A DNA stretch of 63,877 nt, counting the filler, from Octopus bimaculoides (lineage: Eukaryota), in NCBI RefSeq assembly GCF_001194135.2. It is 7 parts of 7 records of this genome, joined end to end, with 100 filler letters (N's around TTAATTAATTAA, not from the genome) between each part and the next. Parts side by side here need not be neighbours in the genome. Positions count along the whole stretch, not along the records: positions 1 to 9,875 come from NC_069000.1; 6 more parts are not named here. One strand, 5' to 3'. Within the stretch, counting starts at the first letter, position 1; every line of letters begins with the position of its first letter. This document shows, piece by piece, positions 1-9,875 of the stretch. The position numbers and the translations under genes are program-made. Below the pieces are notes generated by a model that was not told where the DNA came from, made no database searches, and saw nothing but the letters and a program-made list of their open reading frames with translations.

Positions 1-689
1 ATATATATATATATATATATAACTACGCAGTTTTAACGCGAGGTTATAACACATGCGTATGTATATACGTATGTCCGTGTGTGTGTGTTTATGTATGTGT
101 GTTTATGCATATACGGATGTATGTAATGTATGTATATCTTCATATATATTTACTCCTATATGTTTGTATGTGTACTTGTATGCATACAAATGTATACATA
201 ACACATGCACATACATAAACACACAAACACACACACACACACACGTATATATATATATGTACGTCCGTATGTATGTATGTATGTATGTATGTATGTACAC
301 ATATACATGCAAGTATATATAGATGGATACATATAGGGAGATATATAGTTCATATACATATAAAAAGACATTATCAACGAGGATAAAATCTTAATTAATC
401 CATTTACCATCTTTCACAATATTTCCGATGCTACGTTGTTTAAGAACCTTCTTTTTTTTATATATGCTACTGCATCAAATTGAACCTCGCGTATACATCC
501 TTGTCATTAATAAAAATGTTTAAATGGCACGAAGTTGTAGAACTGATCCTAAAGCCTTCCATTATCGCATTCATCATCTTGAGAACTTGTTCAAAAAAAA
601 ATAAATAACAACACTGATCGCAGATGAAGGCTTTCGTTCTAAAATTCTGGATTTGAACAAACAAGATATTACGATGGACAAAGGAGATT

Positions 690-697
690 ATTGTTAC

Positions 698-749
<52 letters not shown>

Positions 750-765
750 GTTATTGTTATTATTA

Positions 766-797
<32 letters not shown>

Positions 798-975
798 GTT
801 ATTATTATTGTTATTGTTATTATTATTATTATTATTATTGTTATTGTTATTATTATTATTATTATTATTGTTATTTTTATTGTTATTATTATTATTATTG
901 CTGTTATTATTAGTAGTAGTAGTATTGTTATTGTCGTTATTATTATTATTGTTGTTGTTGTTGTTGTTGTTATCA
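690..975. repeat. Compound (TTA)n/(TTG)n trinucleotide microsatellite
   Basis: Directly visible; accounts for the poly-Y/L/I ORFs in the ORF track. Confidence 0.97.
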
Positions 976-1418
976 TCATTAGTGTGTTGTTTTTGTTGTT
1001 GTAGATTCTCAATGAATAGACATAAAAATAGGGCTAAATTTACATAGTTAATCTGGGTGCTAACAATGTGTATGAGAAAGAAGAAATATTAATTGAATTT
1101 ATTTCTAACGGAAGAGAACAAACCCATACTTTAATAACTAAATTTGATTAAGAAAGGCGGAAGAGACAACCCGAGAAATTTTTAATTAATTAACTTAGAG
1201 ACAAACATAGAGTAGAGAATAAATCTGATATTTTTAATGCTTGTGCGTTTGTCTCTGTGCATTTTTTTTTTTTATCACGTGCTTCCATTTGTCGAATAAC
1301 ATTTCCTGAAGAAGACCAAAGACAGGGATTGAAATAGAAACAACGGTTTATATGGTTGTCTGTTGAAGAAGATCGTTTTCCGAAATCTAGGTTTCGTGCA
1401 TGATAATTAATATGCAAC

Positions 1419-2467: not shown

Positions 2468-2717
2468 AGACGTAAACACACCAACATCGGTTGTCAAGCG
2501 ATGGTGGGGGACAAACACAGACATACACACACATACATATATACATATATATACATATACGACGGTCTTCTTTCAGTTTCCGTCTCCCAAATCCATTCAC
2601 AAGGATTTGGTCGGCCCGCGGCTACAATAGAAGACATTTGCACAAGGTTCCATGCAGTGGGACTGATTCCAGAGACATGTGCTTGGTACGCAAGCTACTT
2701 ACCAGACAGCCACTCCT
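2468..2717 (-). mobile_element. SINE family A, 5' two-thirds (tRNA-derived head, internal microsatellite)
   Basis: Reverse complement aligns with 34584-34870 (ggagtggctg...ggcaccttg(t)gcaa...gaaactgaaagaag...cgcttgacaaccgatg). Confidence 0.85.
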
Positions 2718-2749
2718 AATCCAGATGATGAAGGGAAAGCAAAATGTCG

Positions 2750-3010: not shown

Positions 3011-3110
3011 GTTCATGAAATACCTAAGTGAACCCCGAGAAGCAGAGTAATATACATAACAATCTGCATTTTACAAAAATTTATTACAACGGTTGTAATA
3101 ATAAATCAAA

Positions 3111-3420
3111 TTATGATTCGTTAAATGGTAATTCTAAGCACAGTAATGTAGTCTGTAAGTATACTGTAACAGATTTTGTAGTATTGGTATTCAACGAAAT
3201 AATAATAGAAACTTCCAAAATGATGATTCGTTAAATGGTAATTCTAAGCACAGTAATGTAGTTTGTAACAGATTTTGTAGTATTGGTATTCAACGAAATA
3301 ATAATAGAAACTTCCAAAATTATGATTCGTTAAATGGTAATTCTAAGCACAGTAATGTAGTTTGTAACAGATTTTGTAGTATTGGTATTCAACGAAATAA
3401 TAATAGAAACTTCCAAAATT
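3111..3420. repeat. Three near-identical tandem copies of a 99-bp unit (first copy 110 bp)
   Basis: Units start at 3111, 3221 and 3320 (t(t/g)atgattcgttaaatggtaattctaagcacag...gaaacttccaaaa). Copy 1 has an 11-bp insertion. Confidence 0.95.
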
Positions 3421-3877
3421 AGATACGATAAATTATACAAGATTTCATTTCTGATAAATAAAAAAAAATAGAAACATCCTCCCACATAACATGAACGCCA
3501 TAATAATATATATGGAATTCAGAATCAAGACATTAGAGAAGGAAATAACAAAATATTATTGTCTCAAACAAAATTTTTGTTGAGGTCACAACCCGAAAAA
3601 ACTGACGGTAAAACACTGTTCAAAATCATAAGTAGTATTCATAATTCTGACAACGCCCATGATATACCATATGTCCCAATACCTTCAAGCAATGTATAAC
3701 GTGCTCACACTTCAATAGCAAACGGAATTATCAAAAGTAAAACAAAGCGTGTCCAGAATCAATCACCAAAACCCACATACAGAAATGAGAGTTACAATAG
3801 ACCACATAAATATTTTCAAACTAGGCTTGATCTATTCCATCAAATACCTGGGGAGCAAAATGTAAATACACAACTCA

Positions 3878-3880
<3 letters not shown>

Positions 3881-3968
<88 letters not shown>
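3881..3968. repeat. (GATA)n microsatellite
   Basis: Directly visible. Confidence 0.97.
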
Positions 3969-3969
<1 letters not shown>

Positions 3970-5182
3970 GTAATTATATGAAAGCGTTCAGATACATCTG
4001 CAACACGTCAGAATATTATCATTTAAGATCAGGCTAAGAAAACTATCCATCCCATTCACATACACACAAAAATGTTTTCTAACTATCCACAAACACTTTG
4101 CTGCAATAAATGCCAACAGAGATTAGATCCCAGGAACAACTGCTCTGGCGTTCTAACTGAAAAGACTTTCACTGAAGCCACCAACAGAGCCTACATGCAT
4201 TCAAGAACAAGCTGAACAGCAGGGCTAGCTTGAGCAAGTCCTGACGGCTACACTGAGTTACAAATGTAACTAGGCAGAATATCTGAAGCACTGAACATGC
4301 ACAATAGATCAACGGAGCTAATCTAATGCTACGCAGTGCAAATACGTTGAGTTATCATTTCTTTATATGACAAATAAGATATGAATTTGTGATATTTTTC
4401 TTCTGGCTGAACACCTAACATCCAAAAGGCGTTGGTCTACCGACAATTAGACATTAATACATGTAATGTGATTTGTTTTAAAACACATGGCTTTCCTCGG
4501 TGTTCAATTATAGTAAAGGAGGTAATCTTGTTTTAGATCAAACATGGCGCGATCAGAAGTTTGAATTTTAAACCGAAGAAAAAGAGAAACAACAAAACAA
4601 GAAAGCAACTACATAGAATATACGTATTTAATTTCTTTGTATTGTTTCAGGTTTTTTTTCTTGCTTTTTTTTAATTTTTGCTTTGCTTTTTTATTACCGA
4701 GATCTTCAAATTTCTAGTCATAGGTAATCGTGTATAACGCAATTTCATTCTTATCAGAAATCTTCAGCATAATATAACCCGAAGCAAATAAATTAAACGA
4801 AATTAAACATTTTAGGAAGAAAAACAAATTAGTTTTGAAAAAGTCTCATGAAATCTGTTTTATATATTTCTTCATGTTTCCTTCGTCTTTCGTCATAGAT
4901 CGTTCATAGTTCGGTAAACAAAGTAAAACTTCATATTTTGTTGTATCAACGGGGTAATGTAATCTTTACAGCAATTACTTAGTTTGATTTATGCTAACAG
5001 AGTTTGCTTTCGCTTCTGATATTAAATTAAAATTTACAAAAGAATGATATTTACTTTGTTTACATTAAAATTGGATATTAATTGATTATATAGAGAACAG
5101 GAAAAAGACGAAATCGCTTGCTATCTGACTGGTTTTGTTCTAGTCCATTTAATGTATATATGCATGCGTATGTATGTATATG

Positions 5183-5236
<54 letters not shown>

Positions 5237-5848
5237 TGCGTGTATGCATATCTATATATATTATAAAATATATATTTGTACGTATATGGTCATAAACATA
5301 TGTATATGTATAAATACATATATGTATGTATTTATATACGTATATTCATGCACACATACATACATACATACATACATACATACATACATACATACTTATA
5401 TATATATTTACATTTTTAGATGATATTTTTCAATGTGGCTTTATGTGACTTTTAAAAGATAGAGGCTTATAAAATAACCAAATATAAAATGAAAACAGAG
5501 AAAACATTGAAATGATTTTTAGACATTTATAAGAAACATGAAATAAATAAACGAGGAAATAACTATAATATACAACAACGTATAAATATAAGAATATGAA
5601 TATGAAATGTGAGCGTGCCTCAGTTGTAAAGAAACTGCTCAGCGGTGGTTGTTATGATATTTCAGCCATTGCTATTGTGACACAGGGAGTTGTAGTTCTG
5701 TGTGAGGCATACAGTTGTATAGAGGTTATGTACCTTCGGCTATTTGGGTCTAACGAGTCGCCAATACTGCTAAGCGCCTTATGGGTGCGAAACCAATGGT
5801 CGCTCTATGATCGGTCATAACGTTTAACTTCCTATATGGGAATGCAGT

Positions 5849-6068
5849 ATAATTCTTTCTGTTAAGAGCACAAGGCCTGAAATTTTATGTGAAGTGGTTA
5901 TTCGATTACATCGAATCCCAGTGCCCAACTGGTACTTATTTTATCGACCCCGAAAAAGGAAAAGGTGACGTCGACTTCAACGGAATTTGAAATCAGATCG
6001 TAAAGCCAGTTGTACTGCCGCTAAGCATTTAGCTCGATCTACTAACGATTATGCTAGTTCGCCACCTT
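5849..6068 (-). mobile_element. SINE family C (tRNA-derived, (TTA)n-tailed)
   Basis: Reverse complement aligns with the copy at 46684-46900 (ggtggcgaact...caaattccg...ggggtcgataaaataagtaccag...ggccttgtgc). Confidence 0.85.
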
Positions 6069-6093: not shown

Positions 6094-6478
6094 GTGGAGG
6101 TGCAATGGCCCAGTGGTTAGGGCAGCGGACTCGCGGTCATAGGATCGTGGTTTCGATTCCCAGACCGGGCGTTGTGAGTGTTTATTGAGCGAAAACACCT
6201 AAAGCTCCACGAGGCTCCAGCAGGGGATGGTGGCGAACCCTGCTGTACTCTTTCACCACAACTTTCTCTCACTCTTACTTCCTGTTTCTGTTGTACCTGT
6301 AATTCAAAGGGTCAGCCTTGTCACACTTTGTGTCACGCGGAATATCCCCCGAGAACTACGTTAAGGGTACACGTGTCTGTAGAGTGTTCAGCCACTTGCA
6401 CATTAATTTCACGAGCAGACTGTTCCGTTGATCGGATCAACTGGAACCCTCGTCGTCGTAAGCGACCGAGTGCCAACA
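6094..6478 (+). mobile_element. SINE family B, near full length
   Basis: tRNA-like head with A-box tggcccagtgg (6106-6116) and B-box ggtttcgattcc (6149-6160). The body (caaagggtcagccttgtcacact...) recurs inverted at ~34000-34050. No tRNA 3' acceptor stem. Confidence 0.85.
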
Positions 6479-7353: not shown

Positions 7354-7445
<92 letters not shown>

Positions 7446-8076: not shown

Positions 8077-8145
<69 letters not shown>

Positions 8146-8763: not shown

Positions 8764-8813
<50 letters not shown>

Positions 8814-9000: not shown

Positions 9001-9170
9001 TTCAGTTTGGTGTCGGTTTGTTTACGGTGTTGGGATAGTGGTGGGTGGGGGCAGAACTACTGTGACAAACCGTGTCTTAACCACTAATTGTTGCTGATGC
9101 AACCCTACATTTTGCATTAAATGCTTTTACGAAATTTTTAGTTGAAGGGAAATAAAGTGATATGAAATTA

Positions 9171-9535
9171 GAACGTATTAAAGTTTCTTTGCTTGTCCAA
9201 AGGATTTTCGCAAATTTGTTTGTCCTAAACGTCCTTGATTGTTCCAAAACTTCTAGATTGCTCTCGTTTCATGCATTCTGAGTAATGCAAAGCTCTCTGT
9301 CATATGTCTCAAATGACTCTGGTAGTTGAAAAATCGTCTAACGTTCGGTGAAGAGCGAGACTCGAAACGATGACTGGTATGTTTCTTCTTCGTGCATTAG
9401 AATCTAACAGAACGCATTAAAGTTTCTTTGGCTGTCCAAAGGATTTTCGAAAATTTGTTTGTCCTAAACGTCCATGATTGTTCTCAGACTTCTAACTTGC
9501 CCTCGTTTCATGCATTCTCTTTCATATGTCTCAAA
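9171..9535. repeat. 1.5-unit direct repeat, period 239 bp
   Basis: 9171-9314 is repeated, diverged, at 9410-9535 (gaacg(t/c)attaaagtttctttg...catatgtctcaaat). Confidence 0.9.
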
Positions 9536-9700
9536 TTAATCGTGTAGCAGAAAAAAAACAATTGAAAGCAGGTAACATATATGATGCACGGAAATATGTC
9601 CCGTCCGCCACATGTAATACACAGGCAAGGGAAGTGCTGAAAATAAATATGCAGGTCATCGTATACATGTTCAGCTGTATACGATATATATATATATCGG

Positions 9701-9746
<46 letters not shown>

Positions 9747-9795
9747 ATTAAATCAAGGATATAAATTCCCTCCTAAAGGGATATCTGTATGCAAG

Positions 9796-9875
9796 TTCGC
9801 CGGTTTAATCCTGCGCCAGTGAAAAGTCTATCTAAAATCTTTGGCTTTTCACTGGTGCAGGATAAAATCGGTGAA
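9796..9875 (+). ncRNA. Candidate pri/pre-miRNA hairpin (33-bp stem, 14-nt loop)
   Basis: Arms 9796-9828 and 9843-9875 form 28 Watson-Crick pairs, 4 G.U pairs and 1 A.A mismatch on the + strand. No known miRNA recognised. Confidence 0.4.

What the first reader, a model, noticed from the sequence alone, without database searches (positions are those of the whole stretch)
9796..9875. Candidate novel microRNA hairpin with strand-asymmetric G.U pairs
Seen: 33-bp stem and 14-nt loop. All four transition differences between the arms are G.U pairs on the + strand (they would be A.C on the - strand), and the single mismatch is 12 bp from the base. Established: Drosha substrates have ~33-35 bp stems cut ~11-13 bp from the base, and coleoid cephalopods have many lineage-specific miRNAs. 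Inference: 5p of about 9808-9829 (AUCCUGCGCCAGUGAAAAGUCU) and 3p of about 9843-9865 (GGCUUUUCACUGGUGCAGGAUAA). Caveats: two G.U pairs could come from CpG decay of a DNA palindrome, and the hairpin abuts an artificial gap.
Basis: partly seen in the sequence, partly recalled or inferred. Interest (0 to 1): 0.7.

Follow-up and report, generated by a model that had tools for sequence, protein, structure and literature searches.

The report
Near-perfect hairpin, unproven as microRNA
The last 80 bases of this piece are a real, almost perfect inverted repeat that would fold into a very stable RNA hairpin, but nothing I could test marks it as a microRNA gene, and it is more likely an ordinary decaying DNA palindrome in repeat-rich non-coding DNA.

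Summary
Positions 9796-9828 pair with 9843-9875 (28 Watson-Crick pairs, 4 G.U, one A.A at 9807/9864) around a 14-nt loop. The + strand RNA folds at -51.8 kcal/mol (z -12.8). This is by far the most stable 80-nt fold in the piece. (1) The right arm runs to the last base of the piece, so "33 bp" is a lower bound, not a Drosha-sized stem. (2) All four transitions being G.U on one strand occurs in about 3-27% of simulated neutral palindrome decays (about 14-19% with realistic settings), and two of the four are CpG-to-TpG changes. (3) The stem is much more perfect than I recall for typical pre-miRNAs. It lacks the basal UG and apical UGU motifs. In Rfam it gives only generic sub-threshold hairpin hits, on both strands. 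No cephalopod genome, small-RNA data or MirGeneDB sequences were reachable, so copy number, orthologues and processing remain untested. Best reading: a non-genic inverted repeat, either a Made1-like palindromic MITE copy or a local inverted duplication (about 0.65). A young lineage-specific miRNA remains possible (about 0.1). Interest is low.

The parts
9796..9828 (+). 5' arm of the inverted repeat (33 nt visible). It keeps the CpGs at 9798-9799 and 9814-9815 that the other arm has lost.
9829..9842 (+). 14-nt AU-rich spacer or loop (UAUCUAAAAUCUUU)
9843..9875 (+). 3' arm of the inverted repeat. It runs to the last base of the piece, so it is cut off there. It carries T at 9856 and 9872 (CpG to TpG) and at 9868, each paired with G.

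Best explanation
This is a non-genic DNA inverted repeat (a short palindrome with arms of at least 33 bp and a 14-bp spacer) in repeat-dense, non-coding, AT-rich eukaryotic DNA. It arose as a near-perfect inverted duplication. The more likely origin is insertion of a short palindromic MITE or foldback element of the Made1 type (my split: about 0.4). The less likely origin is a local template-switch inverted duplication (about 0.25). It has since decayed by five point substitutions, four of them transitions and two of those CpG-to-TpG. By modest chance, the four transitions all leave G.U rather than A.C on the + strand. If the locus is transcribed, the RNA would fold into a very stable hairpin that Drosha, Dicer or ADAR could sample, but no dedicated small-RNA gene is implied. 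Shown: the structure, its non-random nature, the substitution pattern, the lack of coding potential and the repeat-rich context. Inferred: the origin and the lack of function.
For: Five lines of evidence support this.

- The inverted repeat is far beyond chance, so a real duplication event made it.
- The arms differ only by substitutions, with no indels: 4 transitions and 1 transversion. Two of the transitions are at CpG sites that the other arm keeps. That is the signature of neutral decay.
- A neutral-decay simulation gives at most one broken pair on at least one strand in 3-27% of runs, and about 14-19% with ts:tv of 2:1 and CpG hypermutability of 5-10 fold. No selection is needed.
- The near-perfect duplex (AMFE -64.8, MFEI 1.52) matches how Made1 is described. 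Made1 is a palindromic MITE of 37+6+37 bp that forms highly stable hairpin loops. It had 7,850 annotated human copies and seven mir-548 genes derived from it (PMC1784062).
- The context is repeat-dense. It holds microsatellites and minisatellites, a tRNA-like SINE head at 6099-6167 (A and B boxes read), a local duplication at 9170-9333 / 9409-9555 and an (AT)n tract 50 nt upstream. No Pfam domain reached its curated cut-off in ten of the longer stop-free translated segments.

On priors, curated octopus miRNA genes number only 164 (PMC9699675). That is few against the thousands of comparable inverted repeats I would expect in a genome that is about 66% repeats (PMC13282606, abstract). The count of inverted repeats is my estimate, not a measurement.
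Against: No second copy of the arm was found in the 9.9-kb piece, so a multi-copy TE origin is not shown. No target-site duplication can be seen: the two bases left of the visible repeat are AG, not TA, and the right flank is missing. All four transitions being G.U on one strand, with no indels, is what RNA-level selection would also produce. The visible dimensions happen to fit a Drosha substrate.
Confidence: 0.65

Rival explanations
1. This is a young, lineage-specific microRNA gene. The + strand transcript is cut by Drosha about 11-13 bp from the base and then by Dicer. That would give a 5p of about 9807/9809-9829 and a 3p of about 9842/9843-9865.
For: The stem is at least 33 bp with a 14-nt loop and is stable in context. 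The + strand is favoured by 16 kcal/mol because all four transitions are G.U. The arms are single-copy within the piece. Coleoids have gained many novel miRNA families, and the authors say their count is probably an underestimate (PMC9699675).
Against: The stem length is only a lower bound because of the edge. The asymmetry is not significant. The duplex is almost perfect, unlike what I recall of typical curated miRNAs. At the expected -14 position (9793-9795, AAG) there is no UG, and at the 5p/loop junction (9826-9832, GUCUAUC) there is no UGU or GUG. Rfam gives only sub-threshold generic hits on both strands. The arms and six candidate 8-mer seed sites are absent from the Zolotarov 2022 supplementary tables. 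Those files are truncated and hold no full miRNA sequences, so that last point is weak. The prior is low: 164 curated genes per genome.
Confidence: 0.1
2. The visible 80 nt is only the apex of a much longer inverted repeat that continues past 9875. If transcribed, it would give a long double-stranded hairpin RNA, a source of endo-siRNAs or an ADAR editing substrate, rather than a miRNA.
For: Pairing is unbroken right up to the last base of the piece (11 consecutive pairs, 9796-9806 with 9865-9875). No natural end of the stem is seen.
Against: There is no positive evidence. The upstream bases 9785-9795 cannot be checked against a partner. Long inverted repeats with so short a spacer tend, from my own knowledge, to be unstable.
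Confidence: 0.15
3. This is an assembly artefact: a fold-back chimera built at the end of a contig.
For: The hairpin sits at the very end of the piece. The piece contains an assembly gap (N run 1524-1604) and starts inside an (AT)n tract. That would fit a short scaffold from a fragmented assembly.
Against: Artefactual fold-backs are expected to be perfect copies. Here the arms differ at 5 of 33 positions, all by substitution, with a transition and CpG bias typical of real evolution.
Confidence: 0.05

Closest known systems
Made1 palindromic MITE, the source of the human mir-548 family (PMC1784062)
   Same: An element of about 80 nt made of two long inverted arms around a very short spacer. It is a nearly perfect palindrome and forms a highly stable hairpin if transcribed. 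This is the known route by which TE palindromes sometimes become miRNA genes.
   Different: The arms here are at least 33 nt and the spacer 14 nt, against 37 and 6. Multi-copy status and a TA target-site duplication are not shown here. I did not compare the sequences, and the host lineage differs.
Canonical animal pri-miRNA hairpin (Drosha/DGCR8 substrate, MirGeneDB annotation criteria)
   Same: A single hairpin with a visible stem of 33 bp, a loop above 10 nt, and a mismatch in the lower stem.
   Different: The upper 21 bp are fully paired, and AMFE is -64.8 kcal/mol per 100 nt. The basal junction and 3' flank are unseen. No UG or UGU motif is present. There is no read evidence and no orthologue.
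Coleoid and octopus novel miRNA families (Zolotarov et al. 2022, PMC9699675)
   Same: The presumed host lineage is the same. That rests on my memory of octopus SINE sequences and was not verified with tools. These families include 35 restricted to Octopus.
   Different: Neither the arms nor six candidate seed-match 8-mers appear in that paper's supplementary tables. The paper required presence in two species and small-RNA reads, and neither could be tested here.
Rfam mir-1677, MIR8675, MIR7696 and mir-3747
   Same: The covariance models align end to end with the hairpin.
   Different: Scores are 33-37 bits against gathering scores of 63-91. Hits occur on both strands and to unrelated plant and bird families. 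These are generic long-hairpin matches, not homology.

Membership tests
Animal microRNA gene (MirGeneDB-style criteria) | Hairpin with at least 16 complementary nucleotides between the two arms and a loop of at least about 8 nt | tested here: met
   32 of 33 positions pair and the loop is 14 nt
Animal microRNA gene (MirGeneDB-style criteria) | Stem of about 35 bp ending in a basal junction with single-stranded flanks | tested here: inconclusive
   Pairing runs to the last base of the piece (9796.9875), so stem length is at least 33 and the 3' flank is absent
Animal microRNA gene (MirGeneDB-style criteria) | Small-RNA reads from both arms with 2-nt 3' overhangs and uniform 5' ends | not testable with these tools
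Animal microRNA gene (MirGeneDB-style criteria) | Presence of the hairpin in a second species (the criterion used for novel octopus families, PMC9699675) | not testable with these tools
   No cephalopod genome was reachable. Protein-based routes returned nothing, and a positive control with a SINE open reading frame also returned nothing. Exact-product look-ups were empty.
Animal microRNA gene (MirGeneDB-style criteria) | Supporting processing motifs (basal UG at -14, apical UGU/GUG, downstream CNNC). These are supportive, not strictly defining. | tested here: not met
   Read directly: 9793-9795 is AAG, and the 5p/loop junction 9826-9832 is GUCUAUC. The CNNC position lies beyond 9875 and cannot be tested.
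Any described miRNA family in Rfam 15 | Covariance-model score at or above the family's gathering threshold | tested here: not met
   The best hit is 37.4 bits against 90.8 (MIR8675). There are 24 sub-threshold hits on both strands.
Palindromic MITE (Made1-like, Tc1/mariner-derived) | Two long terminal inverted repeats around a very short internal sequence | tested here: met
   Arms of at least 33 nt, 85% complementary at the DNA level, with a 14-nt spacer. Made1 is 37+6+37.
Palindromic MITE (Made1-like, Tc1/mariner-derived) | Many dispersed copies in the genome | not testable with these tools
   There is only one copy in the 9.9-kb piece. Prokaryotic and metagenomic collections gave only 19-25-nt single-site matches, which I read as chance matches, and the viral contig scan gave none. 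No host genome is available.
Palindromic MITE (Made1-like, Tc1/mariner-derived) | Target-site duplication (TA) directly flanking the inverted repeats | tested here: inconclusive
   The bases left of the visible repeat are AG (9794-9795). The nearest TA is at 9788-9789, six bases further out. The right flank is missing.

The most novel reading that the evidence does not exclude
The hairpin is a recently born, lineage-specific small-RNA gene (a proto-miRNA) that arose from an inverted duplication or palindromic MITE. RNA-level selection on the + strand would have filtered arm substitutions so that only G.U-compatible transitions survived in the stem.
Probability: 0.1. Interest if true: 0.35.

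Novelty: new member of a known kind. Interest (0 to 1): 0.15.

Why it matters
If it were a real miRNA, it would add one more young locus to the coleoid miRNA expansion and give an example of miRNA birth from a palindrome. That would be useful but incremental. As an ordinary inverted repeat it matters mainly as a caution for sequence-only miRNA prediction. Near-perfect hairpins at a sequence edge can look Drosha-sized only because they are truncated. A four-out-of-four G.U asymmetry is also too little data to infer RNA-level selection.

Tried and rejected
**Protein-space search for repeat copies.** I translated the open frame across the hairpin.
- A 44-aa padded query found no candidate.
- An exhaustive HMMER search of the 33-aa frame against 1.84 billion representatives found 0 hits.
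- As a positive control I searched a 124-aa open frame from a SINE-like element that I expected to be high-copy. It also found nothing. These databases therefore do not hold spurious ORFs from this kind of genome, and the negatives say nothing about copy number.

**Fetching the source contig to read past 9875.** Four exact-product look-ups of window ORFs were all "not on record".

**DNA pattern scans.** The 19-mer arm pattern gave 13 metagenome and 16 prokaryotic-genome hits. All are single-site matches of 19-25 nt without the second arm, so I read them as chance matches. A two-arm gapped pattern found nothing in viral contigs.

**Literature.**
- Full-text searches for 12 arm sub-sequences found nothing relevant; the single hit is a paper on zebrafish fin regeneration, which I did not open and take to be a coincidental match.
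- The Zolotarov 2022 supplements hold neither the arms nor candidate seed 8-mers. They contain no full miRNA sequences and are partly truncated.
- The supplement of the O. vulgaris repeat-annotation paper is tiny and has no TE library.
- No supplements are held for the MirGeneDB 3.0 paper.
- Searching SINE sub-sequences to confirm the organism found nothing.

**Readings considered and dropped.**
- tRNA-like or SINE origin of the 5' arm (GGTTTAATCC against a B box). ARAGORN found nothing, no acceptable T-arm can be drawn, and no A box lies upstream.
- A 37-bp Tc1-like mini-element bounded by CAGTG...CACTG inside the hairpin. Its flanks are inverted rather than direct, so there is no target-site duplication.
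- Coding context. No Pfam domain reached its curated cut-off in ten of the longer stop-free segments. The best was FAR1 at 19.6 bits against a cut-off of 28.1.

Full report
**The observation.** A pair-by-pair table shows 9796-9828 pairing with 9875-9843. There are 28 Watson-Crick pairs, four G.U pairs (9799.9872, 9803.9868, 9815.9856, 9827.9844) and one A.A mismatch (9807/9864, the 12th position from the visible base). The loop is 14 nt (9829-9842). As RNA, the + strand folds at -51.8 kcal/mol (z = -12.8 against dinucleotide shuffles). The - strand folds at -35.8 because the four G.U become A.C. As DNA the fold is -27.6. The hairpin is unchanged inside 200 nt of context.

In a sliding 80-nt fold of both strands of the whole piece, this is the best structure by a wide margin. 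The next best is -37.0 and lies in a microsatellite, and the mean is -11.1 with sd 6.6. The arm sequence occurs only in the two arms. The feature is therefore real and non-random: an inverted duplication event, or selection, produced it.

**The edge.** Pairing runs to the very last base of the piece (9796.9875), and the last 11 positions are all paired. The "33-bp stem" is therefore a lower bound set by where the sequence stops. The basal junction, the 3' single-stranded flank, the CNNC position and any right-hand target-site duplication are all invisible.

**The G.U asymmetry.**
- The arms differ at five positions, all substitutions: four transitions and one transversion.
- T9856 and T9872 sit where the other arm keeps CpG (9814-9815 and 9798-9799). 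They are ordinary CpG-to-TpG changes.
- All four transitions can be explained as C-to-T changes on the + strand.
- I simulated neutral decay of a perfect 33-nt palindrome until five arm differences had built up. At most one broken pair on at least one strand occurred in 3% of runs (ts rate twice each tv type) up to 27% (strong transition and CpG bias). It was about 14-19% with ts:tv of 2:1 and CpG hypermutability of 5-10 fold.

**Other miRNA features.**
- The hairpin has AMFE of -64.8 kcal/mol per 100 nt and MFEI of 1.52 at 42.5% G+C. Its upper 21 bp are fully paired. From my own knowledge, curated animal pre-miRNAs are usually much less perfect. This level of perfection is typical of young DNA palindromes and of MITE-derived hairpins.
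- If the 5p starts at 9807-9809, the basal UG would be expected near 9793-9795, which reads AAG.
- The apical UGU/GUG would be expected at the 5p/loop junction, which reads GUCUAUC. These motifs are supportive rather than required.
- Rfam 15 in permissive mode gives only sub-threshold matches. On the whole piece these are MIR8675 at 37.4 bits (gathering 90.8) and mir-1677 at 34.1 and 32.7 bits (gathering 84).
- On 9740-9875 alone, 24 families match on both strands. They include plant and chicken-specific families and reach at most 37 bits. Any long hairpin behaves this way. It is not homology.

**Context.**
- The piece is AT-rich (G+C 20-49% per 500 nt) and has no tRNA gene.
- No Pfam domain reached its curated cut-off in ten of the longer stop-free translated segments.
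- An assembly gap lies at 1524-1604.
- It is dense in simple repeats: an ATT-rich minisatellite at 687-997, a 99-bp tandem repeat at 3165-3433, (AGAT)n at 3880-3969, (TG)n at 7357-7442, (TC)n at 8079-8138, (GACA)n at 8764-8813 and (AT)n at 9684-9746, about 50 nt upstream of the hairpin.
- It carries tRNA-derived SINE-like sequence. At 6099-6167 there is a weak full-length tRNA model match with recognisable A and B boxes. Similar pieces lie near 2560-2720, 2750-2830 and 5860-6060. From memory these resemble octopus SINEs. I could not confirm that with tools.
- A local duplication (9170-9333 against 9409-9555, 79-90% identity) lies just upstream.

**Attempts to reach related sequences.** None succeeded.
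- Translating the open frame across the hairpin and searching protein space found nothing. A positive control with a SINE open frame also found nothing, so those negatives carry no information.
- Exact-product look-ups of four window ORFs, meant to recover the source contig and read past 9875, were empty.
- The arm 19-mer matched 29 prokaryotic or metagenomic loci. Each was a single 19-25-nt site without a second arm, so I read them as chance matches.
- A two-arm pattern matched no viral contig.
- Full-text sequence searches and supplement searches found nothing. The octopus miRNA paper's stored supplements hold no full miRNA sequences, so a match to MirGeneDB remains untested.

**Weighing.**
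- Curated octopus miRNA genes number 164 in O. vulgaris and 162 in O. bimaculoides, acknowledged as an underestimate (PMC9699675).
- The O. vulgaris genome is about 66% repeats (PMC13282606).
- Palindromic MITEs are a known source of exactly this shape. Human Made1 is 37+6+37 bp and had 7,850 annotated copies. Seven mir-548 genes had been traced to it when that paper was written (PMC1784062).
- The prior for any one near-perfect hairpin being a miRNA gene is therefore of the order of a percent. That figure is my estimate.
- The G.U pattern and the compatible dimensions raise it by perhaps tenfold. The over-perfect duplex, the missing motifs and the truncated stem pull it back.

My probabilities are:
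- about 0.65 for a non-genic inverted repeat (about 0.4 palindromic MITE or foldback copy, about 0.25 local template-switch duplication);
- about 0.15 for the apex of a longer inverted repeat;
- about 0.1 for a young miRNA;
- about 0.05 for an assembly artefact. The five transition-biased arm differences argue against this last one.

**Verdict.** The interpretation cannot be decided with the tools at hand and is, on balance, unlikely. The decisive tests are simple for anyone holding the genome: read the next 50-100 bases, count copies, check synteny in a second octopus, and map small-RNA reads. Novelty and interest are both low. At best this is one more young lineage-specific hairpin in a clade already known for many.

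Noticed in passing
window 6099-6470: A tRNA-derived SINE-like element. The head at 6099-6167 has an A box (TGGCCCAGTGG) and a B-box-like GGTTTCGATTCC, and gives a weak full-length Rfam tRNA match (11.6 bits, E=8). It is followed by a GC-richer body. From memory it resembles octopus SINEs. A 124-aa open frame across it has no homologue in the protein database.
   Followed up: partly
window 2560-2720, 2750-2830, 5860-6060: Further SINE-like fragments, for example CGACGGTCTTCTTTCAGTTTCCGTCTCCCAAATCC... at 2560. I recognise them only from memory as cephalopod interspersed repeats and did not verify this with any tool.
   Followed up: no
window 9170-9333 and 9409-9555: A local direct duplication of about 150-165 bp at 79-90% identity, with copies 222-239 bp apart, lying 240 bp upstream of the hairpin. 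The hairpin itself is not part of the duplicated unit.
   Followed up: partly
window 3165-3433 (partial copy 3055-3153): A 99-bp tandem repeat, 2.7 copies at 97% identity, with a more diverged partial copy just upstream.
   Followed up: no
window 687-997: A long ATT/GTT-rich minisatellite (period 3 and 30, about 300 bp). It produces spurious low-complexity ORFs on both strands.
   Followed up: no
window 1-21 and 1524-1604: The piece begins inside an (AT)n tract and contains an 81-base N run (an assembly gap). This suggests a short scaffold from a fragmented assembly, so the hairpin may sit at a true scaffold end.
   Followed up: no
window 215-294, 5148-5365: TA/TG-rich microsatellite palindromes give the highest Rfam scores in the piece (mir-297 at 59.7 bits, mir-3149 at 56 bits, both below gathering). 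These are low-complexity artefacts and show how easily miRNA models match repeats.
   Followed up: yes
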